From Podarcis bocagei (Eukaryota), in assembly GCA_964188305.1 (NCBI GenBank), contig OZ076900.1: a stretch of 64,000 bases of DNA; one strand, 5' to 3'. The position numbers and the translations under genes were made by a program. The notes beneath the pieces were generated by a model, which worked only from the letters and a program-made list of their open reading frames with translations, was not told the DNA's origin and did no database searches. The first letter of the stretch is position 1, and each line of letters opens with the position of its first letter. Shown piece by piece: positions 12,617-46,154 of this stretch.

Positions 12617-14358
12617 AGCATCCCCTCCTCCCTCCAAACCCAGGTTACAAAGTTGGTAGCCAATAGAAGGCTTCCCCCCTGCAATTGCAGAGCAGACAAC
12701 CTATTTGAACCCAGACTGGGCTTGCTAAATCAAAAGCAGGGTAGTAGTTAACTTCTTACCTTCAAAAACTGAATTGGTGCCAAAATATGAGGAAGTGTCA
12801 TGAGTTTCCAAAGAATCCAGAAACGTCTGCAAGGGGCGAGAGGGCAGGGAGAGAGTCAGAAACTATGAATGTGTGGACCTGACTCTTGGCTTGATGGGAT
12901 GCTCTTGGAAGAAGTGGAGTTGGATGATAGAGCACCCCCTCCAATGCAGACAGGGAACCTGGGTACTATGAGGGGTAAACCAGAGGGGCCTTCTTCAGAT
13001 GACAGCCTGCCTGACGAAACAGCAATACGGAGGGTCCCAATCCCTACCCACCCTCCTAAGTTGGGTGCATTTGAGGGCCATTTTTAAAAGTAAGAAAGTG
13101 TAGTCACATATTTGGAATGAAAGGTGTGTGTGTGCTGCTTAAGAGATGGCTAGTTTGTGTGTCATTGATTATGATTTTAAAGCAGGACTTGGGAACCAAT
13201 AGTTGTCAAGAGGATAGGGTCTGGCATGTCCCTATATTATCTGACAGTTGTCTCCTTAGCGGCTACCTTTGTGAACAGGCCTTTGTGTAACTAAAGAGGT
13301 CAAATACAGATACCGTGTTGACATAGAAACTAAATAGCCAGGACCCTTAACAAAAAAATAGCCCAGCTCTAAAAGGAGCCAAGTGTCAGGAGCCTTTACC
13401 CCAAAAGGCACCCCTAACATTCTAAGTAAACTTGTGTCGTTTGTAAAAGGTTTATTTAACCCCCCCCCCCCCTAATCCCTTGCAAATCTTTGATATTTTT
13501 GGTGTATTTTTCTTTTTGTAAATCTACCAAAGAATAAAATCAAATAAAGATTAAGGTGTTTTTTTCCAGGAAGGTGGAAGGTGTGTGTGCTGTGTCCCAT
13601 TGGTGAAGTGGTGATGGCACCCACCCTTCTTCTGATAGGAAATGCTGGGGGGGGTGGAATGGGGATTTGAGGAGGGTCACTTGGGAGGTGGGGAGAAATG
13701 TCCCTATTTTCATCTGAGGAGTATTGGAGAGTGTGCCAGAACCTCTGCTGGCATTGGCTGTAAATAAAAACTGCAGTTCAAAGGACTTGTGCTTGAACTT
13801 TCTACTCCTCCCTCCCTCTTGTTTTTCCTTGTGTGCTGTGTGTGTTTTTAGATTGTGATACTTGAGGGCTGGGGCCATCTTAGTGTTTATCTTTGTAAGC
13901 TGCTCTGACAAGTCTGTGGTTAAAGAGGTCCAAGTGCCATAATAAATAAATTTTAAGTGTATTGTTCAGAGACAACACTACAGCAATACATTCCCCCTTC
14001 ACCCACTGCAATGATCTGGGCTTATATATTTTTTCAACCTAGTATCTGACTGAGTGCTTCTTTCCATGCATGAAACTAGCCACACAAAAACTGCTGACTA
14101 GATGGTGCCATTCATAGAGATGCGGGAGCAGGGAGCAGGCTCAAAGCAAATTAATGGAGGTTTACCACTGAACTACCCCACAGTTTTATTTAAAGAGCTA
14201 GATCAACTCCATCAAGTATTTCTTTTGCAGGAGGAAATGAACTCTTTCCCTTGCAGCCCTGTTTTTCTACAGGTCAAACTTACCCGTTGGGTTCTTGACA
14301 GCCAGCAAACTCCCAAGGGGAACACTGCACAAAATACCACCCAGGTATTTAGGGCCAT
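276..14358 (-). CDS. ADAMTS13: ADAMTS13 (von Willebrand factor-cleaving protease), 5' 11 coding exons; gene continues beyond the left edge
   Basis: Manually spliced exons (minus strand): 14284-14358, 12760-12826, 12020-12303, 11188-11329, 10494-10633, 9277-9360, 7429-7553, 6557-6703, 3100-3234, 909-1059, 276-380. All introns are GT-AG with consistent phases. Diagnostic peptides: [80 protein letters not shown]. Confidence 0.96.
605..815 (+). mobile_element. tRNA-derived SINE (decayed)
   Basis: gccagtgtggtg...gggttcaaatccc head followed by a SINE core. Confidence 0.5.
909..1059 (-). CDS. ADAMTS13: ADAMTS13 disintegrin-like exon
   Basis: 151 nt; [11 protein letters not shown]...[29 protein letters not shown]. 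Confidence 0.95.
1698..1901. mobile_element. GC-rich non-autonomous hAT-like element
   Basis: Perfect 8-bp TSD cttctata at 1690-1697 and 1902-1909. Confidence 0.7.
2065..2303. mobile_element. Tc1/mariner-type MITE (CAGTGGTACCTC TIR, TA TSD)
   Basis: ta|cagcggtacctc ... gaggtaccactg|ta. Confidence 0.85.
2322..2684 (+). mobile_element. Sauria SINE
   Basis: aggtaaaggacccctggacagttaagtccagtc...tttagaccacagcgc, recognised Sauria SINE body. Confidence 0.8.
3100..3234 (-). CDS. ADAMTS13: ADAMTS13 exon with third zinc His and Met-turn
   Basis: 135 nt; [45 protein letters not shown]. Confidence 0.95.
4126..5365. mobile_element. Non-autonomous Tc1/mariner element (CCGTATTTTTCG TIR) with an internal GC-rich minisatellite (~80/120 bp units, ~4270-5215)
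   Basis: ta|ccgtatttttcgccctataggacgcacc ... ggtgcgccctatgggccgaaaaatacgg; tandem cgggtagctctgcgcaagccgc...agagctgcctcttatcccgaagcccc. Confidence 0.8.
5915..6079. mobile_element. hAT MITE (CATAGCTGTCAAC TIR); an inverted copy of the family at 37058-37210 is in every array unit
   Basis: 13-bp perfect TIR; 8-bp TSD cccagaag at 5907-5914 and 6080-6087. Confidence 0.85.
6557..6703 (-). CDS. ADAMTS13: ADAMTS13 exon with HEIGH zinc motif
   Basis: 147 nt; [48 protein letters not shown]. Confidence 0.97.
7429..7553 (-). CDS. ADAMTS13: ADAMTS13 metalloprotease exon ([19 protein letters not shown]...[10 protein letters not shown])
   Basis: 125 nt exon with AG/GT boundaries. Confidence 0.95.
8058..9247. 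mobile_element. Non-autonomous hAT element (TAGGGCTGGGTGAT terminus) with a nested LINE 3' fragment (~8111-8435)
   Basis: Termini tagggctgggtgat / attgcccatgccta; 8-bp TSD gagctgac / gagccgac (one mismatch). Confidence 0.7.
9277..9360 (-). CDS. ADAMTS13: ADAMTS13 metalloprotease exon ([28 protein letters not shown])
   Basis: 84 nt exon with AG/GT boundaries, nearly identical to the human peptide. Confidence 0.95.
9688..9958 (-). mobile_element. Solo LTR
   Basis: TGTTA...TAACA termini, 5-bp TSD aacgc on both sides; CCAAT/TATA-like motifs and AATAAA on the minus strand. Confidence 0.75.
10494..10633 (-). CDS. ADAMTS13: ADAMTS13 exon: furin site RYRR and start of the metalloprotease domain
   Basis: [47 protein letters not shown]; AG/GT boundaries. 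Confidence 0.95.
11188..11329 (-). CDS. ADAMTS13: ADAMTS13 extended propeptide exon ([17 protein letters not shown]...KPHIILRT)
   Basis: 142 nt, ccctag acceptor and gtaggc donor, phase 0 to 1; has the I.P ... PHII pattern typical of ADAM/ADAMTS prodomains. Confidence 0.85.
11350..11610 (-). mobile_element. CR1-type LINE 3' / SINE fragment
   Basis: ...gggaatgagttccatagtttaactatg and MATNLDGLK relic typical of CR1 3' ends. Confidence 0.55.
12020..12303 (-). CDS. ADAMTS13: ADAMTS13 extended propeptide exon ([11 protein letters not shown]...YCEGQL)
   Basis: 284 nt open exon inside ORF 11753..12328, ccacag acceptor and gtgagt donor, phase 1 to 0; M12B propeptide-like. Confidence 0.85.
12760..12826 (-). 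CDS. ADAMTS13: ADAMTS13 exon 2 ([22 protein letters not shown])
   Basis: 67 nt, ttgcag acceptor and gtaag donor; resembles human exon 2 (CLQALEPQAVSSYL). Confidence 0.85.
14284..14358 (-). CDS. ADAMTS13: ADAMTS13 coding exon 1 (signal peptide [25 protein letters not shown])
   Basis: ATG at 14358, hydrophobic 25-aa leader, donor GTAAGT, phase 0 matching the next exon. Confidence 0.8.
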
Positions 14359-16174
14359 GATGATACCAGCAGGATCTACAATGTACACCTCGGAGCAAGT
14401 GAGAAACTCTGGGCTTCCTTTTGGCCTTTTCGTGTCATGGAGCAGAATCAACAAACGGCAGAGAGTTTAAACAAGTGAGGTGGGGCATTTCAGGGGAAAG
14501 GGTATTTTTCTGCTGCAGCTGGGGGCTCTGCCAAAGGAGCTGAAGGGCGGAGGAAGGCTTGTGCAATGTTTGCACAGACTGGCCTCAACCAAACAATCAG
14601 TGATGGAAATAGGAGCTTTGGGATGGGTTATTTTGAAAATGCACACACAGCAAAACAAGACAGAAAAGAGAAGCCCAGGAGTGCAGGGGGATGGAAGAGG
14701 CATTTGTTCTACTTTCAAGCAGATTCCCGGTTTGTGTCAACCAGGGATGGAAGGCTCTTGTCAATTTTGGTCATTTCAGTTTCTCATTTTTCCAATCTTT
14801 AATCAAGTTCTCCATATTTATGAAGCAGTTTGCAAACTTTTAAAACCCCTCACAAAAATTCTACAGCACTGTGGTGTCAATTTCTTGTATTAAAACACAT
14901 ATTTCTCTGCAGTTTTGACTAGTGTAAACATTTTTGCAAACATTTTTTCCTAATGTTTCTGTGTTATTTTCACTAATACATTCATCTTTATGCACATTTC
15001 CCATCCACCCTTCTCCAGTGAGAGATGGTGAGGCTGGGGCTCCTCACCTTTACAGAACATCTACACAGGACTGAAAACTAATTTGAGGTAGCCTCAGTGA
15101 AAATTGAAACAGGGCAGTTTTTTATTCTGGATTAGATAACTCAGGACAATTTTGTCTCTCTGGTTTCATATATCATAGACTCCAGTTCTCCACACTGCTG
15201 ATAGAACCTATCAATTTGTTTTCAGACTTTGGGGGGACATTACACCTTACTCCCCCCTCCCCCGTATGCTGTGCTAGAAAGAAATATATACACACACACA
15301 AAATTTATTTTTATCCTTCCAATCATTTAACAAAGCTGGGGTGAATAATGAAAAGAAAAGCTCTGTTAGGATAGAAGAAAAGGGATTACCGGTAAATTCA
15401 GGAGACATGTGGGATGCATAAAATGAGACTCTGTGTGGACCCTAGGGCCAATGGTTGTCCACATTTCATTTACAGCTTTCAAGAGAACAGCCTGTACTTT
15501 GAGTTGGGCTCCGCAATTAAGGCATCAAAAATGTTCTTCTGAGTTGGCCTTTTGAAGGCTTCTAGGCCTAGTTCCTACAACAACTGATGAGGTGGTAAAC
15601 TCTAGGCTCTACCATTTTGGATGGTAGTTGGGGCTCATGGGACAGAATACACTTCAATATTAAAAACAAAGCCCCAGTGTAGAAAACTGAGTGTTGAATG
15701 AAGAGTTTTAGCCTAGTTTAAATAGGCTGGGAGGATAGGATTTTTTTCCTTCCAATTTATCCTTTTCAAAAATGTAGGTTTTGCCCCTACAGTTATAGGG
15801 AATATGACCAACTGCTGTGTAAGGGGAGCCCTTGATAACGGTCGGGTACCACCAGGAAGAGTGAATTTATTTCTCTTTCTACCCCCTCCCTCCCTGAGTA
15901 GTTCTTATTCTACACTTCCATCTTACATGATGGCATCATAATAGTCTCCTTCCTCACAAGTTCCATGGTTGTCATAGAGATGGCAATAAATTATTTTGCA
16001 TCATCATAATCATCCTGTTGAATCTTCCTGTTTTCAAGAACTCTGAGCAGTTCCTATTCTGCACTGGGATGCTAGGATATTAGATTGTGGGACGTTAAGT
16101 TTCCATGCATGGAGCAGTCTGCACAATATTGCTCAAACGTAAGGGGGATTCTGATGAACAGAACTCCCTATTCT

Positions 16175-18301
16175 TTTTTAAAAAATAATAATATTTATTC
16201 AAAGTTTAAGAATTAAAGAAAGCAGTAAAAAAGAAAGAGAAAAATAAACAATACAAATCAATACATTACAATACATATAAAAAAGCAAAAGACACAATAC
16301 ATCTAAACAAAAACAAAAGCAAAAACAGTTAAAAACACACCCAATATTTCCATATCTTTATCTTTCATTAACTTGTTTCATCGACCTCCCTTTTTGTGTT
16401 CTAGTTATTAATTATTTCAGCAAATCCTTTCCATCTTTCACTGTTTTCTGTCATTTAATTATCTTAATATTTTTTTAACCTTATCTTACCATTAAGACCC
16501 TAAAACTTATTTATACTTAACTCCTTATAACATTTCTACTAAAGCCATATAATTTCATTCCAACATTTTTCTAACACTCATTAATTTTGCAACATTTCTC
16601 TAAATAATTTTTTTAAACCCCCCCCCAATCTTCTTCCACCATCTCTTCTCCCTGGTCTTAGATTCTGTCAGTCCTTTCTATCAATACCATATAGTCCATC
16701 AACCTGGTGACCTTCTGTCCGAGGCTCTTAACTCTCTTCCATGTCCCTTCTGCAGATCTTCTTCATATTTATACATGCACTTTACTTTATCTTCTGCTGA
16801 TCTTGTTCTTAATTTCCTTCCTTTGGCATTGAGGAGTAGATCTCGGGGAAACTCCAACCTAACAATGTCCTTATTCCTTCTCGACAGGTCAGCCCGTTCT
16901 CCATAGTCAGAACTAAAGTCCAAAAGATATTTCAGAGCGCCAATCTCCCCCTGACCCAAATCCAGATCCCAAAGGCCAGAGCATCCCTGCATAAGAGGAT
17001 CTATCCAACTTTCCTTCTCCAATCCAAGCAGGGCTCCATCCCACCAAATCTGTCTTTTTCTAGATTGGATCATAAAGGGCAACAGCTTATGTTCATCAAA
17101 TTCCCTCTGTGAGGCCGGGGCTCTCTCCACTTGAATTACTTGAGGTTCAACAACAACTTTCTCCTTCGACTTCTCCACAGCTTACCATGTCAAAACAGAT
17201 TCCTGAGTCAATTCCTGGGTAATTTCTGTATAGGTATTCACTTTTTGTCCCAACTCAGTCATTTTTTGTCCCAAATTGTCAATTTTAATAATCATCACAT
17301 CAGTCTTCTCATGAAGCTGTTCCAATAGAGCACTTGTCTTGCAAAATGCAATCACTAAGGCTTCTTCTGTCAACATTCTTGTCCAAGGTTCTGATTCTCT
17401 TGTCCTCTGATTCTCACGATTTTTAATCTCTGCAGCTGGAAAATTCCCCAGCTCCACTCCTGCAACAGTTTCAAAAGCTCCCTCTAGGGGAAACAATTTC
17501 TATTTGTATCCATCCTTTTGAACACAGATCCAGTGACAGAGTTAGTTTCGATTTCCAGTTACTTCTTTGCTCCTTTTTAAGTGCAAAAGGAAACAATGGA
17601 AACAATATATTTCTCTTATTTAACTATCTGTCAACATATGTTTTATTCACAGTCAATGAACTTTCCCAAAACGTCAATCTTACTGGCAGCCTGTTCCCAG
17701 GTTCGAAACGGTGGTGATTTATCTTTCTTCACTCTCTCTCCTGCAGGCTTAAACGATCTAAAATTTTTTCCCCTCTTCTCCTGCTTCCAAGGGGGGTTTA
17801 GTAATTTTGACCGATGGAGATTTAATCCTTTACAAAAGACTTTCCAGGCTTTAGCTTGTAACGTCTTTGCTTTAATCTATTTACAAAAGAGGAAGGCAGA
17901 CTTCCTGTTTGAAACCTTCCCGTTTCGATGCCAAATTAAGAAGTTTAGAGATCCAATTTTCCATTCTACTCACGGGTAGTTGTTTAGAGTCCAATTGTCC
18001 ACAGGAAAAAGTCAGCGCTCTCCGGCAACAGCAATGCGGCTTCACTCTGTGAAAGAAGCAGTTGATTTGAAGCACCACGCCACTCACCCCATGTCGCTCC
18101 GGATCCCCGAAACCGGGTTTCCCCGCCAGTAGGGGAGGCGCAAAAGGTGCCAGCCGAATCCCACGTCCACAGGCTTCTCCCGCCTGTGGTTTTTAGTGGG
18201 TCTCTGCCTCGCTGTGGCGGTCCAGACCCTGATTTCCACGGAGGAGATTCCTCCCGATCAGAGGAAATCCGCCATTGCCGGAGGCGCTAACCCGGAAGTC
18301 C
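16175..18301 (-). mobile_element. Full-length non-autonomous L1-derived retroelement (ORF1 relic plus ORF2 3' tip), with TSD
   Basis: TSD cagaactccctattct at 16159-16174 and 18302-18317; GC-rich 5' end GGACTTCCGG; coiled-coil-like ORF 17182..17496; the 3' part matches the C-terminus and 3'UTR of the L1 at 33.0-34.1 kb; A-rich tail. Confidence 0.8.
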
Positions 18302-19469
18302 CAGAACTCCCTATTCTAAGTGGAATGGGGAATTAATGAATATTCAGCACTCCTGTACCCGTGTCTCCTTGGCTGCCTGGGATACCATGTGCACATATGA
18401 ACTGGACTCTAAATAAGAAATGGTGTGACTATGTGAGGAAATGACGACAGCCATATGTTTGGAACAGGAGTGGGAAACCTGATTTTAAGAAATTGTAGTA
18501 AATTAAATTAATTTGGTTTGATTTATAATAATTTGGAAAAAAAATTTTAAAATGGTAAAAAGGTAGGACCTATTTTTATTGTAGAGTATATTCCTCCTGA
18601 GGTAGTTAATGCTTCTTCCAGTCCATTATTCCTGTTCTCCTTTTTACATAGTACTATGCTATTTCAGTAATCAAAAAAATCTGAGGGGCTGCAAAATTCA
18701 GAAGATCCACTTGGAGGCTCCAAATATTGGCTTCAAAAGATTACCAAAGTCTGCACATTTTATCCTTCTTGGGGAGGATAAACCTTATGCGATCAAGGCT
18801 TTAATCAGGTGTATTTGTGTGGCAGCAGTAAATAAAGGGAGAGTAGGTTTCTTCTGCTCTCTATTTATTTACTTCCCCCACACCTCCTGACACCAGAGTT
18901 CTGCTTAAGCCCATGCAACAGCAGGAAGCCCTTTCTGCCTCACCTCCCCCTCTCCCATGTTGCTGAGACTTGCTTGGCAGCCACCACTATTCCAATGAAA
19001 AAAGTAAACTGGTGTTATTTACTGAGTTAAAAATAAATAAACTTGTCTTGTTTTCTAAGCCTCTTTCCTCTCTTCTCCCCTCCTGTGTGTGTGTTTCTGT
19101 GCCCACTCCTCTCTTTTAGGGAACGTTCTATCACCTTACCTTTGATATCAATGCTACTCATTAGTTCTACAGCTTTTATTTTAGATAAAAGCTGCTAATT
19201 TAAGAATTATGTGTCCATTCGCCTCTACATAGCTCCGTGCCTATTTCAGACTTGCTGTTATAGCGGTATAGCATGATGTTTAGCTGGTGAAATATCACAA
19301 TGTTGAAAAGCAGACATCTCTCTGCCCTGGATGGAGCACTTTTCCTTTATCACCTATGTTTATGTAGGATGCTCATTTCAGTCTGTCAATCTTCCTGCCT
19401 TTTCAAGTATCAGTACCTCATTTGTGACATAATATATTGCATGCAGAACTTGCTTTTGTTTTAGGTATG

Positions 19470-19839
19470 TGAAATATACTCAGAGTCGCAAAGTGATTTC
19501 ATGCTCTTTATTCAGCTCCTAGTGGTGAGGAGGAATGAATGAAAGTCCCCTCACAGTATCTGCTTTATATACATTATTTACACAATGGGCTGCACATGAT
19601 TGGCTAATTCCGGAATTCTACTGTAAGCCAATCAGGTTGTGGATTCACTTCTATCTGGAGCAGGATTGGGTGGTTCCTGCCAACCAATCATACTGCTGCA
19701 TTGTTCTAGGACCAATCAGACTGCTGCATTCTGAATCCTATTGTTCTAGGACTAATCAGACTGCTGCAATTTGGATCCTATTGTTCTAGGACCAATCAGA
19801 CTGCTTCAGTTTGGATCCTATTCAACTCAGTACATAACA
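19470..19839 (-). mobile_element. Solo LTR inserted in the satellite
   Basis: TG...CA termini, 5-bp TSD gtatg; tandem CCAAT-containing repeats, then TATATAAA and AATAAA on the minus strand. Confidence 0.75.
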
Positions 19840-22800
19840 GTATGTTCCTCCAGAGGTTCTTAACTGTTTCCAGTCCATCATTCCATTTCTGCTTTATACA
19901 TAGTGCTATGCTATTTCAGTCAGCCAAAAATCTGAGGTGTTCCAAAATTCAGAAGATCCACTTGGGGGTGCCAAATATTGGCCTTCCAGAGGCACACTTT
20001 TAAGGAAAGATTTCAAAGTGCATCCATGGAGGGCGGTGCTAGGTACTTGCTTGCCCAGGTTTGGGCAGGACAGAAGGGCTCTAGGACACTGCCAGAGCCT
20101 TGGACTTCCCTACCCAGAACCAGAGCGCTGCTCAGGTTGCTCAGCCAAGGCGGCACAAAATTGAGAAGATCCATATTGTCTGCCTTTGGAAGGGTGGCAC
20201 AAGGGCTCTGGGGTGCTGCCACTAAACCACTAAACCTTATGAGATTGCAGTGGGGGGGAGGTAAATAAATGGAGAGTGGAATTCCTCTATTTATTTACTT
20301 CCCTAAACTGGGGTTATGTTGTTGTTGTTTTTTAAAAAAACTTGTCCCAGTTGTTTAAGCCTCTTTCTTCCCTTCTCCCCTCATGTTTGTTAGGGAATAT
20401 TCTCTCATCTTACCTTTGATATCTATGCTGCAAATCATTCTACAAATTTTTTTTTTTTTTTAGGGAAATGGTGATAATATTAAATTTTCATGTACTGTAA
20501 TATAAAATAACAGTTGTGACAATATTTAAAGGGTAAGAAAACATTTACAAGTTTTAGTCCCCTTAGTAGTAGCAGTTGCCAGCACAGGACCCTGTTCACA
20601 TCTACATAGATCCATTGGGGGCGGTATTTAAGTAGGGACTTGGGGAACAGCTGAATTCCCTTACGTTTTTTATTAATTTTTTTTTGTCTGGGAGGACTAG
20701 AATGGATATACACACAATACTTGATCATTCAGATCATTGCTTGAATTTATTAACCACGTCTTACTTTTAGGTACTGGGCAGGGAAGGTGGCAATCCGACT
20801 AGGGCTGCAATAAACAAACAAAACGTTTCATGGTGAGTTCCTCCACTTTATTCTATAAAAAATGCTCTGGTTCTATCCTTATTTCTGACATGCTGCTGTA
20901 CTGGTATATCACAATGTTTAGGTAGTGACATATCACAATGTTGAAAAGCAGACATCGCCCAGCCTCGTTGTATCACCATTTTAGGAAAGATTACAAAGTG
21001 CACCCATTTTGTGTAGCCTTTGGAAGAGCAGCGCTAGGGCTCTGGGATGCCAGAGCCCTGGCACCACCTTCCCAAAGCCGGAAATCTAGTACTTGCTTGT
21101 GCAGCATTGCGGAGGAGGGAGCTGCTCAAGGACACTGCAGTTTCCTTCCCAGAGCCAGAGTTGTGGCAGTATCCCTGGCAGTGTTTCTGCCCAGGGCACC
21201 CAGACTCTACCTTTGGAAGGGTGGCAAAAGGGCTCTGGGATGCTGCCAGAGCCCCTGACACCAAGTAAACCTCATGAGATTGCAGCTTTGCACTTGTGTG
21301 GGGTGGGGGTGGGGAGAGAATAGATAAATGGAGGGTGGGATTCCTCTGCTTTCTATTTATTTACTTCCCAAAACGGGTTATTTTCCAAAAAAAAAAAACC
21401 TACCTCAGTTGTTTGAGGATCTTTCCTCCCTTCTCCCCTTCTTTGGGGGCATGTGTCTCTGTGTCTCCTTCCTGGCTGTTAGGGAACCTTCTTGTATCTT
21501 AGCTTTGATACCTATGGTACTAATAACTTTTACAGGTTAAATTTTAGAGAAGAGATGATAATTTTAGGATTATCTGCAGTATAAGATAACAGTTGTAACA
21601 ATATACTAAAGGTAATAATTTTTTATATATAAAGGTTAGACCCCTATGCAGTAGCAGTTGCCAACATGTTTGCCTCTACATAGTTCCATCCTTATTTCAG
21701 ACATGGTGTTATATTGGTGGTATATAGTGATGTTTAACTGGTGACATATCATGCTGTTCAAAAGCAAACATCTCACTGCCCTTTCCCGTTCTGACCTATG
21801 CTTATGTAAGATGCTCATTTCAGTCTGTCAATACATTGCGTATAGAACCTGCTTTTGTTGTAGGATATATTCCTCTGGAGGTACTTTACACTATTTTCAG
21901 TCAGTTTTTACATAGTGCTAGGCTATTGCAGTCATTCCAAAATGTGAGATGATGAAAAATTCAGAAGATCCAATTAGGGGCACCAAAAATATTGGACATG
22001 CACAGGCTGCCATTTTTGGAATGATTACAAAGTGCATCTATTTTGTGCAGCTGTGGGAGGCCGGCACTAGGGCTTTGGGAGGCTGCCGCAGCCCTGGCAC
22101 TGCTTTCCTGAAGCCAGAATTTAGTAAGGACTTGCCCACACAAAAGTGAGAAGATGCATACTTGAGAAGATCTACTTGGGGGCACCAAATATTGGCCTCC
22201 CCGAGGGTGCCATGTTAGGAAAGATTACAAAGTGTATTCATTTTGTATAGCTTTTGGGAGGTGGCGCTAGGGTGGCCCCGCCTTCCCAAAATGGGAAGTC
22301 TAGTACTTGTTTGTGCAGCATTGCGGAGAAGAGAGGTGCACTGCCACAGCCCTGCAGTTTCCTTCCCAGAACCAGATCAGTGCCTGCAGTTTTCATCACA
22401 GCAAGCCCATCTTAGGTGGCATGAAATTTGGGGCTCTTGCAAGAGTAGGAAGCCATTTCTGCCTCCCCTCCCAAAAGCCCGGCATGTTACTGTGGCTCGC
22501 ATGGCAGCCTCCACTACTCTGGTAGAAAAATAAACTGGAGTTATTTAATGCTGAGTTTAAAACAATAAAATTAATCTTGCTCTGTTTAAGCCTTTTTCCT
22601 CCTGTTGCCCCACAAACAATCTGCGTCTCCTCATCTCTGTTAGGGAACATTCTGTCACCTTACCTTTCACATCTATGCTGCTGATTTCTTCTACAGCTTT
22701 TTTTTTAAAAAAGGTATTATTTTAAAAATTATTGGTAATATAAAATCACATTTGTAACAATTTCTTAAATGTAAGTTAAAATGAATAAGTTTTAGACCCC

Positions 22801-27924: not shown

Positions 27925-28157
27925 CAGTGGTACCTTGGGTTAAGTACTTAATTTGTTCCGGAGGTCCGTACTTAACCTGAAACTGTTCTTAACCTGAAGC
28001 ACCACTTTAGCTAATGGGGCCTCCTGCTGCCGCCACGCTGCCGGAGCACGATTTCTGAAGCATCTTCTAATCTTGAAGCAAAGTTCTTAACCTGAGGTAC
28101 TATTTTTGGGTTAGCGGAGTCTGTAACCTGAAGCGTATGTAACCTGAGGTACCACTG
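27925..28157. mobile_element. Same Tc1/mariner-type MITE, inserted into the satellite
   Basis: ta|cagtggtacc ... ggtaccactg|ta interrupts the satellite motif tctagta|cttgcttg. Confidence 0.85.

Positions 28158-28741: not shown

Positions 28742-28747
<6 letters not shown>

Positions 28748-28795
<48 letters not shown>
28748..28795. repeat. (TA)n microsatellite; others are (TTC)n ~3996-4027, (CA)n ~12560-12614, (CT)n ~35142-35189, (GT)n ~35539-35588, 46112-46151 and 56718-56757
   Basis: Directly visible. Confidence 0.9.
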
Positions 28796-28797
<2 letters not shown>

Positions 28798-30569: not shown

Positions 30570-30960
30570 GTGTTCAAAATGATGAGTTTAAATCTCACAC
30601 CTCCAGACTTATTACAATGCCTTTCAACTAATCCATTTGATTCACAGACCAAAGGGCAAATATAGAAATTTCAGATCCGGTATAAAAATCATATCATTGT
30701 GGGATGACTTTGTGGTCCAGGAGACCATTGAAATCAGTTTCTGCATAAATTAGGGAATCCTCATTAAAACTTCTGCTTAGGTGGCGCTATACACTGGTCA
30801 TGCTATCCGGAATATTTAAGGAAGCTGATCCTAATTTTCGGAGGGGTTGCACAGTCAAAGCCACATATTTCCATATGTGGTGGTTTTGTGACATCACCAA
30901 ACCTTTTCAGAGTTGTGTCTTCAAAGAAATAGCTTGTTATATAACAAAACAAATCAACCA
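30570..30960 (+). mobile_element. Decayed L1-clade ORF2 C-terminal fragment
   Basis: Relic of the KLLLRW.YT and TYFHMWWFC motifs; frame disrupted. Confidence 0.55.
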
Positions 30961-31491
30961 ATCTCCTTTATTGGCATAGAAAAAGTGCATCATATACATG
31001 GATCAGAACACAACACAGTTAACAAAACATAGTAGAAGATAGTTTAGGACAAACCTGTCCCGACATCGTGAGATTCATAGCATCACTCAAAAATATTTCC
31101 ACATTACCCACAATCTACAATTGTTCAGCAGATACGACACCCTGGAAGAATCAGTGCAATAAATCCCGTCCTTCAATAAGGGGGCCAAATACTTATCATA
31201 TATTTTTGCATAGAATGGGAAATAAAACAAAACGTGTGTGATGGATTCGACCTGTTTTGTGCCAAAACGGCAGTACTGTATCTTTCAGAGTAGGGGATTT
31301 TCTAAAATCTACCTTGCAAAACTGCAGATAGTAAGACGTTGAATCTTGCGAGGGAAATTGTAAAGCTGGTGTAAATATGGCATGTCCTGGCCCAAATGAG
31401 GGTGGAATTATATATAACAAAACAATTGAAATGTCTCCTGCACTAGCACTACTTGGGCTTATGATCCCACCCGCTCAAGACTACCCTAATA

Positions 31492-31733
31492 CAGTGGTAC
31501 CTCAGGTTAAGAACTTAATTCGTTCTGGAGGACCGTTCTTAACCTGAAACTGTTCTTAACCTGAAGCACCACTTTAGCTAATGGGGCCTCCTGCTGCCGT
31601 CATACCACCGCCATGCAATTTCTGTTCTCATCCTGAAGCAAAGTTCTTAAACCAAGGTACTATTTCTGGGCTAGCGGAGTCTGTAACATGAAGCATCTGT
31701 AACCTGAAGCGTATGTAACCCGAGGTACCACCG
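31492..31733. mobile_element. Same Tc1/mariner-type MITE
   Basis: TIRs and TA TSD. Confidence 0.85.
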
Positions 31734-31831
31734 TAATTAGCCATTCTTTTGACAGCTGGCTATATGGAGATAGCCAGATGTTGGAAAACTGGTGTTGGAA
31801 TGAAGACTGATTCTTGGTGTACCAGAGTATG

Positions 31832-31832
<1 letters not shown>

Positions 31833-31892
<60 letters not shown>

Positions 31893-32200
31893 GGACATGC
31901 CCATTTGGCTGGGTTTCCCCAGCCACTCTGGGAGGCTTCCAGCAGGATATAAAAGCATAATAAATCATCAAATAAAAAAACTTCCCAATACAGGACTGCC
32001 TTCAGAGGACTTCTAAAAATTGTGTAGTTCTTTATCTCCTTTACATCTGAAGGGAGGGCATTCCACAGGGAGGGTGCTACCGCTGAGGCGGCCCTTTGCC
32101 AGGTTCCCTGTAACTTCACTTCTCACAGTGAGGAAACCGCCAGAAGACCCTAGGAGGACCTCAGTGTCCGGGATGAATGATGGGGCTGGAAACGCTCCTT
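31833..32200 (-). mobile_element. L2/CR1-clade LINE 3' fragment ending in a (TAA)n microsatellite
   Basis: SAVAPSLWNALP relic typical of L2 RT C-terminus; (TAA)n at 31833-31892. Confidence 0.65.
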
Positions 32201-32709
32201 CAGTCACACTGGCAGAGAAACAACATGTCAGGGCCAAGTAGCAAACACAATCCCTATTCCTTTCATAACATAGGACAAATGTTTATTGAACACATAAATT
32301 GTTCTGACTGTGGCAGGAATCCACCCAACACTCATGGGAAAATGTGGCATGATTTTTTTTGGAGCAATCAAATGCAACTTTTTTACATAGCATGACGAAA
32401 GTCTGTAATTTTATCAGGACAAGTTATTTGTTGTTTACTGTTGGAAATTGTTTTCTCAAAATGTATCTTCTGTACCATGAAACATAAATGAAAACATTAT
32501 TTAAAAGAAAGAAAGAAATCTAACTGTGAAATGGAAAGAAAAAGGCTTAGAGAAAACTTAGTCAAGTTAATTCACAGATGGCAGATGGCATCTAAACACC
32601 CTTAAGACATTTACATAGACAAAACATATTTGCCAGCATACTGGAGAGATGCAGAGCAACTGGTACAACATTCCCTACAAGGTGGACATTATGGGGAGGA
32701 ATATTCACT

Positions 32710-32953
32710 GAAGCCTCCTGCCAACCTAGCAGTTCAAAAGCACGTCAAAGTGCAAGTCAATAAATAGGTACCACTCCGGCGGGAAGGTAAACGGTGTTTC
32801 CGTACGCTGCTCTGGTTTGCCAGAAGCGGCTTAGTCATGCTGGCCACAGGACCCGGAAGCTGTACGCCAGCTCCCTCGGCCAATAAAGCGAGATGAGCGC
32901 CACAACCCCAGAGTCAGCCACGACTGGACCTAATGGTCAGGGGTCCCTTTACC
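32710..32953 (-). mobile_element. Sauria SINE (opposite orientation to the copy at 2322); further fragments at ~29385-29450 and ~34640-34718
   Basis: Reverse-complement match to the 2322-2600 element. Confidence 0.75.
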
Positions 32954-33017
32954 TATTCACTGAAGCAATATTAGAAATCAGAAAGTGCTGTGTAATCAAA
33001 GTTTGGGTTATTAACAA

Positions 33018-34146
33018 TTTTTTATAAGATATTTATTAAGATTTTCAAAGTATTACAAAATAAAAATGAAAAGAAAAAGAATTTTTTAAAAAAAAATGGT
33101 TAAAATCAACTCCATCTTTCCATTACTTATTTTTCATTAGCTTGTTTCCCAGACCTCCTCACGCCTCCCTTTATTGTATTCCAATTCGGTTTGTTGGTTC
33201 AGCAAATCCCTACCCTCTTTGTTTATCCTGGTCTTTAATTTTAAAATATTATGACATTAAATTTTTACCTAAATAATCCATTTTTCATATTCCCTTATAA
33301 TATTACAGCTGAAAACCGCTTAATTTCTATCCAACATCATTCTAACATTCATCAATTTTACAATATTTCTGTAGATAGTCTTTAAATTTCTTCCAATCTT
33401 CTTCCACCGACTCTTCTCCCTGGTCTCGGATTCTGCAAGTCATTTCCGCCAGTTCCATATAGTCCATCACCTTCATCTGCCATTCTTCCAGAGTAGGTAG
33501 ATCTTGTGTCTTCCAATACTTTGCAATGAGTATTCTTGCTGCTGTTGTAGCATACATAAAAAAAGTTCTGTCCTTCTTTGGCACCAATTGGCCGACTATG
33601 CCCAGGAGAAAGGCCTCTGGTTTCTTCAAGAAGGTATATTTAAATACCTTTTTCATTTCATTATATATCATCTGCCAGAAAGCCTTAATCCTTGGGCATG
33701 TCCACCAAAGGTGAAAGAATGTACCTTCAGTTTCTTTACATTTCCAATATTTATTATCGGGCAAATGATAGATTCTTGCAAGCTTGACTGGGGTCATGTA
33801 CCACCTGTATATCATTTTCATAATATTCTCTCTTAAGGCATTGCATGCTGTAAACTTCATACCTGTGGTCCATAACTGTTCCCAGTCAGCAAACATAATG
33901 TTATGTCCAACATCTTGTGCCCATTTAATCATAGCAGATTTCACCGTTTCATCCTGAGTATTCCATTTCAACAGCAAGTTATACATCTTTGACAAAATCT
34001 TAGTTTTGGGTTCTAACAGTTCTGTTTCTACTTTTGATTTTTCCACCTGGAAACCAATTTTCTTGTCCAAATTATATGCCTCCATTATCTGATAGTAGTG
34101 AAGCCAATTTCGCACTTTGTTTTTTAGTTTCTCAAAACTCTGCAAT
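33018..34146 (-). mobile_element. 5'-truncated L1/Tx1-clade LINE, ORF2 C-terminus and 3'UTR
   Basis: ORF 33342..34145 with YRWYMTP..L and WKC....GTFFHLWWTC zinc-knuckle region typical of L1-clade ORF2; AATAAA and A-tail near 33020-33040. Confidence 0.88.
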
Positions 34147-35135
34147 TTCAGTCTATCTGGGTTATTAACAATTTTTAAGGAAGACCAACTTGCTTTGTTA
34201 TATAAGGATCATTATTTTCCTTCTGGTGGCAACACTATTACTTATAGCACAGAATTGGAAGAAACATCTGCATATCACACCATGGAGAGAGAATGTAAGA
34301 ACAATTACCCTAACTGAAAAACTAATGAAGAGGGTACATGCATTGAACAATACAGCTGATGCAGACATTTTATTTGGTATCTCATCATAAAATATTCAAA
34401 TGAACATCTTGATGACAGGCAGCCACCGACCACACACATGGACGTATGGCAAAATCTTATATATACGGTATATGGTAAGTCTTCTGTTCAGGGGTGGGAG
34501 GATGGAGAATGAGGAAAACTTACTGTTTTGTTTATACATTTTGAAAATCATTTAAAAATTATTATGTTTAATAAAATAATAGTTCGCAACTGTTTGTCGC
34601 AGATAGTCAAATTACAATGGAATAAATAGAACTGGCTCCTTCGGCCTGTAAAGCGAGATGAGCGCCGCAATCCCAGAGTTGTCTGCGACTGGACTTAACT
34701 GTCATGGGTCCTTTACCTTTTTTCTTTTTTTACTAAAGCCCTGTCTCTTCGAGTCTTCATTCCAGATGTCCAGGCAGTGAAATGACTTCCTTTATTGTAG
34801 AACCATCAATCCCTCTTGATTCATTTACATCAGGAGTAGGAACTCTACCAATGCATCAGTAGATGCTGGCCAATCCGCAGGTATCCCTCTAGTCTGAATT
34901 AACATAAGCCCCACTATGTGTAAATCTCCAGATTTCCCAACAAATAATTAACACAGATCTAGATCTGTACTCTGTTGAATGTATTTTGATACCATTATGT
35001 TGGGCCTCCTTGGTTTGTAGCTCTTGGACAGGGCTGCTATATTCCGAAAGGTAAAAACCAGGACATCACGAAAGTTGTTGAGCATTTTTTAGCAGAAACG
35101 CCAAAATAAGCCCACGACAGTAGTCCTGGAATAGG

Positions 35136-35194
<59 letters not shown>

Positions 35195-35536
35195 AGCATA
35201 CTTATGTAAGAGATACTTATGTATTTTTTGCACAATGCCCAGAAACACCTTAAGCCACCCAAGCTTTGCCCCTTTTGTGTAAACACCTTTGCCTGTGGAC
35301 TAGGAACTCCTTCCCGACCACCTTCCCAAAGCCTGCCTGATTTTGACAAGGCTGCCTAAGGGATCCTACGATGTTGACGCAGCCCCAGCTGGCACCGCGT
35401 TCCCAGAGAGTCAGGCTTCCTGGCACAGCGGAGATCTGGCCGGGAGGGAGGAGTCTCGGGAGGAAAGGTAGCGGCAGGGCACAGCATTTTTTGCGTTTCC
35501 TAAAACATCCCCCTGGTTGCTACGTATTTTCGTATC

Positions 35537-35591
<55 letters not shown>

Positions 35592-36402
35592 GGAAAATCC
35601 GGACATATGGCAGCCGCGCTCTCGGGCTGCTTTACTCTTGTTGCATATCTATATTTCCTCTTTTCACACTACTCCCCCCGAAAACCGCTCTCTAGCACTC
35701 AGTTGGAGCAAACAGCGAGGACCTGAGCAAGGAGAACGCCATCCCATTCTTACCTAATGTTGAGATATCATACACAATATGTAATTGGTTCATGCTCTGT
35801 CCAAGCAAACTAGAAATGGTGAGCAGGGTTAGGGGTTGGGGTTGTCCTCATATAGTCCTTCTGTTTTTTCCTTCCTTTCTTTCAATGACCAATGTATGAA
35901 TACAAGCTGCTAGAGCAACCCTTTGCCAACAAATATCCCACAGGAAGATTTGGAGGTGCCAAGAGTCCAGTAACAGAGTCCTCTGTCAAATGTCCAAACC
36001 CCTAGGGACCCGAAAAACTTTTATGTCTTGAACCATCATGTGATCTTTGGATGAAAGGCTGTATTAAAAAAATTAATTAATTAATTAAAGTAGTAATAAA
36101 CTGCAATCAAATCTGAAACAGTCTGGAGTCTGGAAAAAAACATATGGATCAAAAGGTATGGAAGGAAAAATGCCTGACCAAGAATCAGCAGTAAAGGGGT
36201 AGATAAAAATGGATTGCCTGTTTCCTCCCCATCCCAAGGATTAACAGTATTCCGTCTTGGTCAGCTAGGAACACCTCTCTGTAATGTTTCTACCCCTTGT
36301 AAAAGTTGTTCCTAACCTAACGTTATCTAAATATTATAAATAAATAAATAAATAAATAAATAAACACACACACACATACATACATACATACATACATACA
36401 TA

Positions 36403-36597
36403 CAGTGGTACCTCGGGTTAAGAACTTAATTCGATCCAGAGGTCCGTTCTTAACCTGAAACTGTCTTAATATGAAGCACCACTTTAGCTAATGGGGCCTC
36501 CCGCTGCCGCCGCGCCACCACCGCACAACTTCTGTTCTCATCCTGAAGCAACGTTCTTAACCCAAGGTACTATTTCTGGGTACCCGAGGTACCACTG
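36403..36597. mobile_element. Same MITE within the 10.6 kb unit (also 38203-38426 and a related truncated copy from 38951; all repeated in units 2 and 3)
   Basis: TIR cagtggtacctc / gaggtaccactg, TA flanks. Confidence 0.8.
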
Positions 36598-37639
36598 TAT
36601 TGAGTGTACCTGAAGACGTGTGCATGCACGCTAAAGCTCATACCAATAACAAACTTAGTTGGGCCCCAAGGCGCTACTGGAAGGATTTTTTTCTTTTCTT
36701 TCGACTATGGCAGACCAACACGGCAACTAAATATCAACTAAATATCTACCTGCAACTAAATATCAGGGGCATGGAGGTGTGGTTCCACTGGGGATATATG
36801 AGTGCAGAGGCGGAGCTGGTACCCAGAGCTGGTACCCAGACCCGGAGCTGGCACCCGGGGGTGGGCCGATCCTCCCAGAGGGGCGGGGTGGCGAGCACGG
36901 GGGCGGCACCGCCTGCCGCGACAGTCCCACGGGGGCGGTGCCACTCGCGGCGAGTGTCCCGGGGGAGGGCGCGGCGGCGATGTCACCCCCACCTCAGAGA
37001 ATACACCGGGGGCGCCCCGCATCCCCTTCCTTAGCCAGTGCCCTCGTGCTCTATCCGCATAGCTGTCAACCTTCCCTTTTTGCGGGAAATTCCCTTATCT
37101 CAGCGCTGCTTCCCGCTGCTATCCCGGATTGTTCGATATCCCGTAGACTGTCCCCGGGACAGGTGAGGCTGCTGATCCCTTCTTTCCAAATCCGAAAGTT
37201 GACAGCTATGCTCCGTCCTCTATCCTCCCCAAGTCTGATTTCTCTGCCTGATGTCTGTGGGAACCTGCCCGGCTGCCCCCTTGATTTAATAGACTTGTAG
37301 AGTTGCAAGGGTTCCTCAAGGATCATCAATGAAATGCAGGATTTGCTCCTCCAGAGGAGGAAAGAGTATTTGGAAATCCATGTGGAGGGGAGGGCAACCT
37401 TTCTTGGGTAGCCTCAGGCAAGCCTTGCCCTAGCCTGCTTCCCAGGGCTGTCTTGAAACTCCACTCCAGACTCTCAGGAAGAGAAAGGGCAATATAACAA
37501 ACCACACAAAGCAAATCTCCAGGGTGTGACGTTTCTGTAGACCGAGTGGAAGAGGCAGGGAAGATGATTCTCAGTACAGGACGAACGGGATGCCCAAATT
37601 TAAGATGGGGAACCCTGTTGGAAGACCTGGAGATGGAGG

Positions 37640-38140
37640 AAGGGATTCGCTTCCTTTAAGGGCTCAAACCACTACGTGCAGGATTTCCCTGGGCAAGCAG
37701 CGCGCTGCCCATCGCCTTCCCTTCCACCCTCTGCGTTTTGTGGGCCTCCAGGCAGAGGAGCGAGCCAAGAGCCCCGCTGGGACCGGGACGCCGCTGAGAG
37801 TGACTCCAGGGCCCCGGGCTCTGAGCCAGCGATGCTCTCGGCGGTCCCCCCGACGCCCTCCTGCCTCGCCCACCGACCACGTCAGGGGCAGGAATCCTTA
37901 AAGGGCGCAACTTGCGCTACGCCCCCTTCCCGGCGTGGCGGCGCACGGTAGGAGGGAAGATGGAGGAGGGTGGCTGCGGAGCGTCCGAAGGAGCCGCGGA
38001 GGCTCGCGAAAAGGCCCTCGAGGAGGCGGTGAACCGCTGGACGGTCCCCTTCTACGTCCACCAGGCCCTCCAGGCTTTCCGGGCCGGCCGCAGCCGGGAC
38101 TTTCGCCAGCTGCGGGACGTCGTATCTGGTGGGGAGACGA
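37640..38140 (+). promoter_or_regulatory. CpG-island-like promoter/exon 1 region of the TERF2-like gene (repeated at ~48200-48705 and ~58805-59310)
   Basis: High GC and CpG density immediately upstream of and across the ATG exon; contains CACGTG and CACGTCA motifs. Confidence 0.6.
37960..38128 (+). CDS. TERF2: TERF2-like copy 1 exon 1 (N-terminus and start of TRFH)
   Basis: aagATGG Kozak context; [56 protein letters not shown]; donor gtgggg, phase 1. Confidence 0.9.
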
Positions 38141-45936: not shown

Positions 45937-46109
45937 TCCTACGTTGCTGACGCAGCCCCAGCTGGCACCGCGTTCCCAGAGAGCCAGGCTTCCTGGCACA
46001 GCGGAGATGTGGCCGGGAGGGAGGAGTCTCGGGAGGAAAGGTAGCGGCAGGGCACAGCATTTTTTGCCTTTCCTAAAACATCCCCCTGGTTGCTATGTAT
46101 TTTCGTATC

Positions 46110-46154
<45 letters not shown>

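What the first reader, a model, noticed from the sequence alone, without database searches (positions are those of the whole stretch)
14358..37960. Non-canonical location: TRF2-like array head-to-head with ADAMTS13, possibly sex-linked
Seen: ADAMTS13 (minus) and the TRF2-like array (plus) are divergently oriented, ~23.6 kb apart. Established, from memory: in human the 5' neighbour of ADAMTS13 is REXO4 (SURF4/STKLD1/REXO4/ADAMTS13/CACFD1), while TERF2 lies near NIP7/TMED6/CYB5B. The ADAMTS13 region corresponds to chicken chr17, part of which is homologous to the lacertid Z chromosome. Inference: an intron-bearing TERF2 copy was duplicated by a DNA-level event into this block and amplified. If the species is a lacertid, this could be a Z-linked amplicon like the testis-expressed gene arrays on other X/Z chromosomes.
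Basis: partly seen in the sequence, partly recalled or inferred. Interest (0 to 1): 0.75.

Follow-up and report, generated by a model that had tools for sequence, protein, structure and literature searches.

The report
Amplified extra TRF2 gene, lizard Z
A wall lizard carries at least three near-identical, intact tandem copies of an extra telomere-protection gene (TERF2, usually annotated as a single gene) beside ADAMTS13, most likely on its Z sex chromosome.

Summary
ADAMTS13 runs on the minus strand, with its start codon at 14358. A head-to-tail array of 10.6-kb units begins at 35364 on the plus strand and runs off the window. The first TRF2-like start codon is at 37960, 23.6 kb from the ADAMTS13 start.

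Each unit holds a nine-exon TRF2-like gene with an open frame: 546 aa, 555 aa, and a third copy cut by the window end.

The gene is an extra paralogue made by a DNA-level duplication. About 8.6 kb (promoter, exons and introns) aligns at 84-88% to the ordinary TERF2 locus on chromosome 8 of Podarcis lilfordi and Lacerta agilis, which lies in DHODH-TERF2-TMED6-NIP7.

The duplication is old. Single copies sit at the same place in P. lilfordi and Zootoca, and the tree puts the event before those genera split. The tandem amplification is young (0.2-0.5% between units).

The frame is kept by selection. The paralogue has a Myb domain and TRFH-like exons, but lacks the RAP1-binding motif and the basic N-terminus. 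A relative transcribes and splices it.

Z linkage is likely (about 80%) but indirect, resting on chromosome size, record order and known synteny. Testis expression was not tested. Other notes of this scan had already flagged two exons of this gene in this window.

The parts
14284..14358 (-). Putative ADAMTS13 exon 1: ATG at 14358, a 25-aa signal-peptide-like stretch, GTAAGT donor after 14284
   Evidence: sequence; ORF. No transcript confirms it.
10395..10676 (-). ORF holding the ADAMTS13 exon with the furin-type site and the start of the metalloprotease domain
   Evidence: the only PDB match is ADAMTS13 (6qig), E 2.6e-10.
6451..6792 (-). ORF holding the ADAMTS13 exon with the HEIGH zinc-binding motif
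   Evidence: translation.
720..1115 (-). ORF holding an ADAMTS13 disintegrin-like exon
   Evidence: ADAMTS13 chains only, E 7.8e-8.
14359..35363 (.). Repeat-rich spacer between the two genes, with no recognisable protein domain
   Evidence: Pfam on ten ORFs, nothing. (a roughly 975-bp tandem repeat at 22005-26585). (27526-35176 is colinear with P. lilfordi L002).
35364..45936 (+). Array unit 1 (10,573 bp)
45937..56542 (+). Array unit 2 (10,606 bp)
   Evidence: 0.55% mismatch to unit 1 and 0.24% to unit 3.
56543..64000 (+). Array unit 3, cut by the window end
37209..45860 (+). Segment of unit 1 derived from the chromosome-8 TERF2 locus: core promoter, nine exons, all introns and about 0.6 kb of 3' flank
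   Evidence: colinear blastn to L003 9675-17603 and L004 9670-18048 at 84-88%.
37960..45271 (+). TRF2-like gene copy 1. Coding exons: 37960-38128, 39714-39928, 40531-40617, 40811-40957, 41593-41978, 42175-42444, 43106-43224, 44186-44250, 45089-45271. Product 546 aa; all introns GT..AG.
48526..55877 (+). TRF2-like gene copy 2: nine exons, 555 aa, intact. It has a longer poly-Ser run in exon 8 and three amino-acid substitutions relative to copy 1.
59130..63615 (+). TRF2-like gene copy 3: exons 1-6 intact, the rest lies beyond the window
45089..45271 (+). Myb/telobox exon of copy 1, with a C-terminal extension past the ordinary stop that the Zootoca paralogue partly shares
   Evidence: PF00249, 53.2 bits against a cut-off of 24.4. 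(alignment).
42175..42444 (+). Hinge exon 6. It is 270 nt, so skipping it keeps the frame. It lacks about 34 residues that hold the RAP1-binding motif in ordinary TERF2.
   Evidence: no TERF2_RBM here; ordinary P0021 scores 56.7 bits. (alignment). (102-nt gap).
45918..45936 (+). 19-bp filler at the tandem junction. Up to about 45917 the unit end matches the single-copy right flank of P. lilfordi. From 45937 the unit start follows.

Best explanation
Origin. Before the wall-lizard tribe radiated, and after lacertids split from worm lizards, about 8 kb of chromosome 8 was copied as DNA into the interval between ADAMTS13 and a laminin-gamma gene (probably LAMC3). The copied piece held the whole TERF2 gene with its core promoter and introns. 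That interval belongs to the chicken-17-like block that forms part of the lacertid Z.

Fate of the copy. It stayed a working gene, with nine exons and an open frame. It keeps TRFH-like exons and the Myb telomere-repeat-binding domain. It lost the arginine-rich N-terminus and the RAP1-binding motif, gained a short C-terminal extension, and evolves about three times faster than ordinary TRF2.

Amplification. In the lineage of this window's species, a 10.6-kb piece (the gene plus 1.85 kb of local upstream DNA) was duplicated head to tail. The junction carries a 19-bp filler and no long homology, which fits end-joining or template switching. The piece now stands in at least three copies. The gene bodies are kept nearly identical, by recent expansion or by gene conversion.

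Inferred, not shown. The protein still binds TTAGGG repeats as a dimer, possibly also pairing with ordinary TRF2, without recruiting RAP1. Its dose differs between ZZ males and ZW females.
For: Array and intact genes.
- Unit boundaries and identities.
- Gene models.

DNA-level origin.
- Colinear alignment of promoter, exons and introns to the chromosome-8 TERF2 loci L003 and L004.
- Those loci lie in DHX38-DHODH-TERF2-TMED6-NIP7.

One old insertion.
- Left and right flanks are shared with single-copy loci in P. lilfordi (L002) and Zootoca (L001).
- Shared derived N-terminus (Arg to Cys) and read-through of the ordinary stop.
- Tree: the paralogues form one clade (92/91), sister to the lacertid TERF2 clade (95/95). 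Both sit inside a 100/100 lacertid clade next to Rhineura.
- K2P distances: paralogue to ordinary gene 0.107-0.130; Podarcis to Zootoca paralogue 0.118; window to P. lilfordi 0.046.

Selection.
- dN/dS is 0.57-0.59 in TRFH and 0.41-0.47 in Myb for the window comparisons (0.93 for TRFH between P. lilfordi and Zootoca), and about 1 in the hinge against Zootoca.
- P(no stop) under neutrality is 0.025.
- Exon indels number 7-9 where about 20 are expected, and the net effect keeps the frame.

Domains.
- Myb scores 53 bits and no RBM is found.
- TRFH exons match human TRF2 structures.

Transcription.
- An RNA contig of a relative joins exon 1 to exon 2 at 96.8% identity to the paralogue. The ordinary gene is 86% identical there.
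- Its 3'UTR contig carries paralogue letters.
- P. muralis has an annotated 'TRF2-like isoform X2'.

Z linkage.
- The P. lilfordi orthologue lies on OX395140.1 (51,098,390 bp).
- Chromosome 8 is OX395133.1. OX395140.1 is therefore the fifteenth record.
- The paper gives the Z as 50.7 Mb at half coverage (50.56 Mb before curation); chromosome 15 is 44.3 Mb.
- The Zootoca record is 48.72 Mb, against Z2 at 49.7-50.1 Mb and chromosome 14 at 46.5-46.75 Mb.
- The lacertid Z carries chicken-17 genes hspa5, lrrc8a and angptl2: PMC6534595; review PMC8622242.
Against: - Z linkage is inferred from record sizes, record order and synteny. No sex-specific depth was measured, and the window's own chromosome name is unknown.
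- The published Z length (50.7 Mb) differs from the record (51.10 Mb) by 0.4 Mb.
- The array is seen in one assembly only. The DNA contigs of other samples that were laid did not decide whether the junction exists there. P. lilfordi and Zootoca assemblies show one copy, which may be true or a collapse.
- In single-cell RNA of the window's own species, every read at diagnostic sites came from ordinary TERF2. Only 12% of the run was read and the tissue is unknown.
- Overall dN/dS of 0.6-0.8 is high.
- The P. lilfordi copy has a 1-bp homopolymer insertion in exon 3, which is either a real break or a Nanopore error.
- Telomere binding and dimerisation were not tested.
Confidence: 0.75

Rival explanations
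1. The locus is autosomal or pseudoautosomal, so the array has equal dose in both sexes and the sex-chromosome reading is wrong.
For: - No direct sex-depth test could be run.
- The P. lilfordi record length (51.10 Mb) is not identical to the published Z length (50.7 Mb).
- Rovatsos et al. report that some Z markers behave as (pseudo)autosomal in some species.
Against: - The fifteenth record of the P. lilfordi assembly at 51.1 Mb fits only the Z. Chromosome 15 is 44.3 Mb and chromosome 14 is 53.0 Mb.
- The Zootoca record at 48.7 Mb is nearest to Z2.
- ADAMTS13 and the laminin-gamma gene belong to the human 9q34 / chicken 17 block, which is Z-linked across lacertids.
Confidence: 0.18
2. The copies are a decaying, functionless amplicon. 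It is a young tandem expansion of an old duplicate that is drifting to a pseudogene.
For: - dN/dS is 0.6-0.8 overall and about 1 in the hinge against Zootoca.
- The RAP1-binding motif and the basic N-terminus are lost.
- P. lilfordi has an exon-3 frameshift and a 357-bp deletion fusing exons 5 and 6.
- No paralogue reads were seen in the same-species single-cell RNA.
Against: - The frame is open and all 16 splice sites are intact in two full copies. Six exons are intact in the third, after about 0.06 substitutions per site.
- P(no stop) is 0.025, and exon indels are few and keep the frame.
- dN/dS is below 1 in TRFH and Myb for most comparisons.
- Spliced transcripts at depth 33-51 occur in a relative's RNA.
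- Zootoca and P. muralis carry annotated coding models.
Confidence: 0.15
3. The tandem array is an assembly artefact, either an over-expanded repeat or stacked haplotypes. The true genome has one copy, as in P. lilfordi and Zootoca.
For: - Single copy in two other assemblies.
- No independent bridging of the junction could be shown.
Against: - There are three copies without any gap, and two haplotypes cannot give three.
- The copies differ by fixed substitutions and indels, including a 27-nt poly-Ser length change.
- Divergence follows an edge pattern: 2.2% in the first 1.5 kb of unit 1 against 0.22% in the gene body. That is typical of real arrays under conversion.
- The two junctions are identical and carry the same filler.
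Confidence: 0.07
4. This is the only TERF2 of the genome, moved here from its usual place (a relocated orthologue).
For: None found.
Against: - Ordinary TERF2 sits at its usual neighbours in two lacertids.
- Ordinary-type transcripts occur in the window's species.
- An earlier scan note places an ordinary TERF2 on another piece of this genome.
- The tree separates the two clades.
Confidence: 0.01

Closest known systems
Ordinary vertebrate TERF2 (shelterin TRF2)
   Same: - Same exon-intron layout as lacertid TERF2, with nine coding exons including the fused TRFH exon.
- TRFH-like exons, hinge and C-terminal Myb/telobox are all present.
- 72-74% amino-acid identity in TRFH and 92% in the Myb exon to lacertid TRF2.
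   Different: - It sits on another chromosome, between ADAMTS13 and a laminin-gamma gene.
- It has no RAP1-binding motif and no arginine-rich N-terminus, and it has a C-terminal extension.
- Its protein evolves about three times faster.
- It is multi-copy in this species.
Ampliconic gene arrays on sex chromosomes, such as the chicken Z amplicon and mammalian X/Y ampliconic genes (from my own knowledge: Bellott et al. 2010)
   Same: - Tandem units of about 10 kb at over 99% identity, each with an intact gene acquired from an autosome.
- Located on what is probably the Z.
   Different: - Only three or more copies are seen, whereas the known cases have tens to hundreds.
- Testis-limited expression was not tested.
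- The amplified gene is a telomere protein, which I do not know from any other such array.
Germline-specific paralogues of telomere-capping proteins, such as Drosophila K81 derived from HipHop (from my own knowledge)
   Same: A lineage-restricted, fast-evolving duplicate of an essential chromosome-end protein that keeps the DNA/chromatin-targeting part and loses partner-binding parts.
   Different: - An unrelated protein family.
- K81 is a single-copy retro-derived gene, whereas this one is a DNA-level copy with introns.
- Germline restriction is unknown here.

Membership tests
TRF2 (TERF2) family | TRFH dimerisation domain | tested here: met
   Exon 1 and exon 2 translations match human TRF2 TRFH chains better than TRF1 (E 9e-12 and 9e-9 for TRF2, 0.1 for TRF1). 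Exon 3 gives a weak PF08558 hit. The orthologous Zootoca protein P0007 scores 51 bits on PF08558. The joined model of the window was not scanned.
TRF2 (TERF2) family | C-terminal Myb/telobox DNA-binding domain | tested here: met
   Exon 9 scores 53.2 bits on PF00249 against a cut-off of 24.4.
TRF2 (TERF2) family | RAP1-binding motif (PF16772) | tested here: not met
   Exon 6 gives no hit, whereas ordinary P. lilfordi TRF2 scores 56.7 bits. The alignment shows a gap of about 34 residues at that place.
TRF2 (TERF2) family | Basic (Gly/Arg-rich) N-terminus | tested here: not met
   The protein starts MEEGGCG. The arginines of the lacertid MARGRGKMAGGGRG stretch are replaced or lie before the start codon.
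TRF2 (TERF2) family | Descent from TERF2, seen in gene tree and gene structure | tested here: met
   The paralogues are sister to lacertid TERF2 inside squamate TERF2, and the introns are alignable.
TRF2 (TERF2) family | Binding to TTAGGG repeats and telomere localisation | not testable with these tools
   Needs ChIP, EMSA or imaging.
Ampliconic sex-linked gene array | Tandem copies at 99% identity or more, with intact genes | tested here: met
   Between-unit mismatch is 0.24-0.68%. Frames are intact in all the copies that are visible.
Ampliconic sex-linked gene array | Location on a sex chromosome | tested here: inconclusive
   Indirect only: the orthologous records fit the Z of P. lilfordi and the Z2 of Zootoca by size and record order, and the synteny fits. 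No sex-depth test was run.
Ampliconic sex-linked gene array | Gonad-biased expression | not tested
   The tissues of the runs were coded. One relative's RNA holds spliced transcripts. The same-species single-cell run showed none.
DNA-level segmental duplicate (as against a retrocopy) | Introns and promoter of the parent are retained, with no poly-A tail | tested here: met
   All eight introns and about 330 bp of upstream sequence align to the parent locus.

The most novel reading that the evidence does not exclude
Lacertids have evolved a second, Z-borne TTAGGG-binding protein. It acts as a natural TRF2 lacking the RAP1-binding motif and the basic domain. Its dose differs between the sexes and, in this species, is boosted by amplification.

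It might act in the germline on telomeres. It might also act on the large pericentromeric and W-linked telomere-like arrays that lacertids carry (PMC7290949). Possible roles are as a modulator or antagonist of ordinary TRF2, as part of a sex-chromosome or meiotic conflict, or as a cause of sex differences in telomere dynamics reported in lacertids. That last point is from my memory and was not checked.
Probability: 0.12. Interest if true: 0.85.

Novelty: new member of a known kind. Interest (0 to 1): 0.6.

Why it matters
Most vertebrate genome annotations returned in my searches list TERF2 as one gene. TRF2 mutants lacking the basic domain or RAP1 binding are standard laboratory tools in telomere research (from my own knowledge).

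Here a vertebrate lineage has kept such a variant for tens of millions of years as an extra gene that is intact and fast-evolving, and that a relative transcribes and splices. The gene most likely lies on the Z, and one species has recently multiplied it.

If confirmed, three things follow.
- Telomere biologists get a natural separation-of-function allele.
- Lacertids get a sex-linked candidate for sex differences in telomere biology. They are a field model for telomere ecology.
- Reptile Z chromosomes get a case of gene acquisition followed by amplification, as known from bird Z and mammalian X.

Full-text searches of the held papers found none that pairs TERF2 with lacertids, Podarcis, squamates or lizards.

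Tried and rejected
- Pfam on raw ORF pieces gave no TRF hit because the pieces are too short. Matches to solved TRF2 structures settled the identity instead.
- The word search cannot reach full-length TRF2 from exon-sized queries. One exon was therefore sent to the representative search.
- Searching the papers for the accession numbers OY735916 and OX395140 found nothing.
- Zootoca ordinary TERF2 (P0023) and the P. muralis TRF2-like protein (P0173) are not on record with a contig. The Podarcis-Zootoca autosomal divergence and the P. muralis chromosome could therefore not be read.
- Earlier scan notes gave no Z markers on this piece.
- Rfam and tRNA scans of the window were empty.
- Read laying on 44801-50800 did not decide whether other samples carry the tandem junction, because bridging pieces were not among those listed. 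All same-species single-cell RNA reads at diagnostic sites proved to be cross-mapped ordinary TERF2.
- A first dN/dS run was wrong for P. lilfordi because of its exon-3 frameshift. Exon 3 was masked and the run repeated.
- Inside scripts, exon translations were joined only for alignment, tree and dN/dS.
- Relocated orthologue: rejected.
- Retrocopy: rejected, because the introns are retained.
Full report
**What is in the window**

The window has no gaps. On the minus strand, at the left, lie 5' exons of ADAMTS13.
- The ORF at 10395-10676 holds the start of the metalloprotease domain and matches only ADAMTS13 among solved structures (E 2.6e-10).
- The ORF at 720-1115 matches its disintegrin-like part.
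- The ORF at 6451-6792 carries the HEIGH zinc motif.
- A signal-peptide-like first exon begins with ATG at 14358 and ends in a GTAAGT donor after 14284.

From 35364 to the window end, self-comparison shows head-to-tail units of 10,573 and 10,606 bp and a third unit cut at 64000. The first TRF2-like start codon is at 37960.

**The gene in each unit**

Exon translations match human TRF2 chains far better than TRF1. One exon, sent to the representative search, brought in squamate TRF2 proteins. tblastn with these proteins marks the same exons in all three units.

Refined by hand, copy 1 has nine coding exons between 37960 and 45271. All introns are GT..AG and the product is 546 aa. Copy 2 (48526-55877) is intact at 555 aa; it has a longer poly-Ser run and three substitutions. 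Copy 3 is intact through exon 6, where the window ends.

The last exon is a Myb domain (53 bits). Exon 6 lacks the RAP1-binding motif that ordinary lacertid TRF2 has. The N-terminus has lost the arginine-rich stretch.

**Extra paralogue, copied as DNA**

The ordinary TERF2 of P. lilfordi (OX395133.1, 84.96 Mb) and of L. agilis (CM020423.1, 84,102,018 bp, which is chromosome 8 by the length) lies between DHODH and TMED6-NIP7.

Window 37209-45860 aligns colinearly to those loci at 84-88%. The alignment runs from about 330 bp upstream of the gene, through every intron, to about 0.6 kb past its end. This excludes a retrocopy.

RNA reads of the window's own species carry the ordinary gene's letters at six diagnostic sites. 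That species therefore also expresses an ordinary TERF2. This agrees with earlier scan note s1-359591.

**Age and spread**

Single copies lie at the same place in two other species.
- P. lilfordi (L002): the left flank is colinear with window 27526-36343 at 94-96%.
- Zootoca vivipara (L001, annotated 'TRF2-like'): the flanks are 88-92% identical.

The right flanks of these two loci are colinear with each other. In Zootoca the next gene, 9 kb downstream, is a 1577-aa laminin of the gamma type. I read it as probably LAMC3. P. muralis also has an annotated TRF2-like protein, 92% identical to the window's TRFH. So either the window's species is another Podarcis, or that model comes from another copy.

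In the protein tree the paralogues form one clade (92/91), sister to lacertid TERF2 (95/95). Both sit inside a 100/100 lacertid clade next to the worm lizard Rhineura.

K2P distances over 5,717 ungapped, mostly intronic columns:

| Comparison | K2P |
|---|---|
| Paralogue to ordinary gene | 0.107-0.130 |
| Podarcis to Zootoca paralogue | 0.118 |
| Window to P. lilfordi paralogue | 0.046 |
| Ordinary gene, P. lilfordi to L. agilis | 0.065 |

The insertion therefore happened once, shortly before these genera split. Gallotiinae and Eremiadini could not be examined.

**The array is a second, young event**

Units differ by 0.24-0.68%. For unit 1 against unit 2, the first 1.5 kb differs by 2.2% and the gene body by 0.22%. 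This is the pattern expected if inner parts are homogenised while the array edge escapes.

The unit end matches the single-copy right flank of P. lilfordi up to about 45917. A 19-bp filler follows, and then the unit start. There is no long homology at the junction, which fits end-joining or template switching rather than recombination between repeats.

The P. lilfordi and Zootoca assemblies show no second copy within 4-10 kb downstream. A collapse in those assemblies cannot be excluded.

**Is it functional?**

Nei-Gojobori dN/dS for the paralogue:

| Region | dN/dS |
|---|---|
| TRFH, window comparisons | 0.57-0.59 |
| TRFH, P. lilfordi against Zootoca | 0.93 |
| Myb | 0.41-0.47 |
| Hinge, against Zootoca | about 1 |
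| Ordinary gene, overall | 0.40 |

Under neutrality the frame would stay free of stops with probability 0.025. About 20 indels would be expected in the exons; 7-9 are seen, and their net effect keeps the frame.

In Logan contigs of a run guessed to be RNA, from a relative about 4% diverged, one contig joins exon 1 to exon 2 and is 96.8% identical to the paralogue. The ordinary gene is 86% identical there. A 3'UTR contig carries paralogue letters. Exon depth is 33-51 against 3-6 in introns.

Against function stand the following.
- The protein evolves fast.
- Two motifs are lost.
- The P. lilfordi assembly has a 1-bp homopolymer insertion in exon 3 and an exon 5/6 fusion.
- No paralogue reads were seen in 12% of one same-species single-cell run.

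**Sex linkage**

No direct test was possible. The indirect case has three parts.
1. The P. lilfordi orthologue lies on OX395140.1, 51,098,390 bp. Chromosome 8 is OX395133.1, so OX395140.1 is the fifteenth record of that assembly. The paper orders chromosomes by size and gives the Z as a 50.7-Mb superscaffold at half coverage (50.56 Mb before curation). It lies between chromosome 14 (53.0 Mb) and chromosome 15 (44.3 Mb). If the records ran by name instead of size, the fifteenth would be chromosome 15 at 44.3 Mb, which does not fit.
2. The Zootoca record is 48.72 Mb. In the male assembly Z2 is 49.7-50.1 Mb and chromosome 14 is 46.5-46.75 Mb.
3. The lacertid Z is homologous to chicken 4p and 17, with hspa5, lrrc8a and angptl2 (human 9q33-q34) being Z-specific across the family. 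ADAMTS13 and LAMC3 are human 9q34 genes; that placement is from my own knowledge.

I put Z linkage at about 0.8. Whether the locus lies in the Z-specific part or the pseudoautosomal part is unknown.

**Comparison with what is known**

By descent and by two of its domains the gene belongs to the TERF2 family, but two family features (RAP1-binding motif, basic N-terminus) were tested and not met.

As an array it resembles the acquired, amplified genes of bird Z and mammalian X/Y. Only three or more copies are visible, and gonad-biased expression is untested.

Full-text searches found no paper that pairs TERF2 with lacertids, Podarcis, squamates or lizards.

Earlier notes of this scan had already examined two exons of this gene in this window (s1-352263, s1-352321) and the ordinary TERF2 elsewhere in the genome (s1-359591).

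**Limits**

- The joined protein model was not searched or folded.
- The species name is coded.
- The extent of the array beyond 64000 is unknown.
It was checked only in that no protein domain was found in the spacer and no gene is annotated in the 10 kb upstream in P. lilfordi or Zootoca.

Noticed in passing
window 22005-26585: A tandem repeat with a period of about 975-1020 bp, roughly 4.5 copies at 75-94% identity, lies in the spacer between ADAMTS13 and the array. A 200-bp sub-repeat lies at 25959-26402. Its origin is unknown.
   Followed up: no
window 4260-5320: A GC-rich minisatellite of 99-bp units (about 10 copies, 75-95% identical) lies inside an ADAMTS13 intron. It produces long spurious ORFs on both strands.
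   Followed up: no
L002 about 12640 (exon 3) and L002 14623: The P. lilfordi paralogue has one extra A in a homopolymer run of exon 3. This splits the annotation into two proteins (P0001 and P0170). It also has a 357-bp deletion, relative to window 41888-42244, that fuses exons 5 and 6 in frame. The extra A is either a real break or a Nanopore homopolymer error.
   Followed up: partly
window 35309-36333 against L001 6818-7822: The roughly 1-kb stretch just upstream of the TERF2-derived segment, which forms the start of the tandem unit, lies in inverted orientation in Zootoca.
   Followed up: no
window 44186-44250 against 54765-54856: The poly-Ser (AGC)n run of exon 8 has 8 Ser in copy 1 and 17 in copy 2, in frame. 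It is a coding microsatellite that varies between array members.
   Followed up: partly
window 36397-36581, 38202-38428, 46922-47160, 48768-48995 and others: A SINE-like element of about 230 bp occurs in many copies across the window. Its k-mer depth is 1e5-1e6 in every run laid. One copy sits in intron 1 of each TRF2-like gene and one sits upstream of each promoter.
   Followed up: no
window 37288-37681: About 390 bp have been inserted into the paralogue's promoter relative to the ordinary TERF2 promoter (L003 9752 and 9748 are contiguous). P. lilfordi shares the insertion. It could have changed where the copy is expressed.
   Followed up: no
window 42175-42444; L001: The NCBI model of the Zootoca paralogue (P0007) skips the exon-6 equivalent. 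Exon 6 is 270 nt, so skipping it keeps the frame. It may be a cassette exon.
   Followed up: partly
P0005 (Sceloporus undulatus): A RefSeq protein named TMED6 isoform X2 carries a full TRF2 TRFH and RBM region in front of the EMP24 domain. It looks like a read-through or fusion model of the neighbouring TERF2 and TMED6 genes.
   Followed up: no
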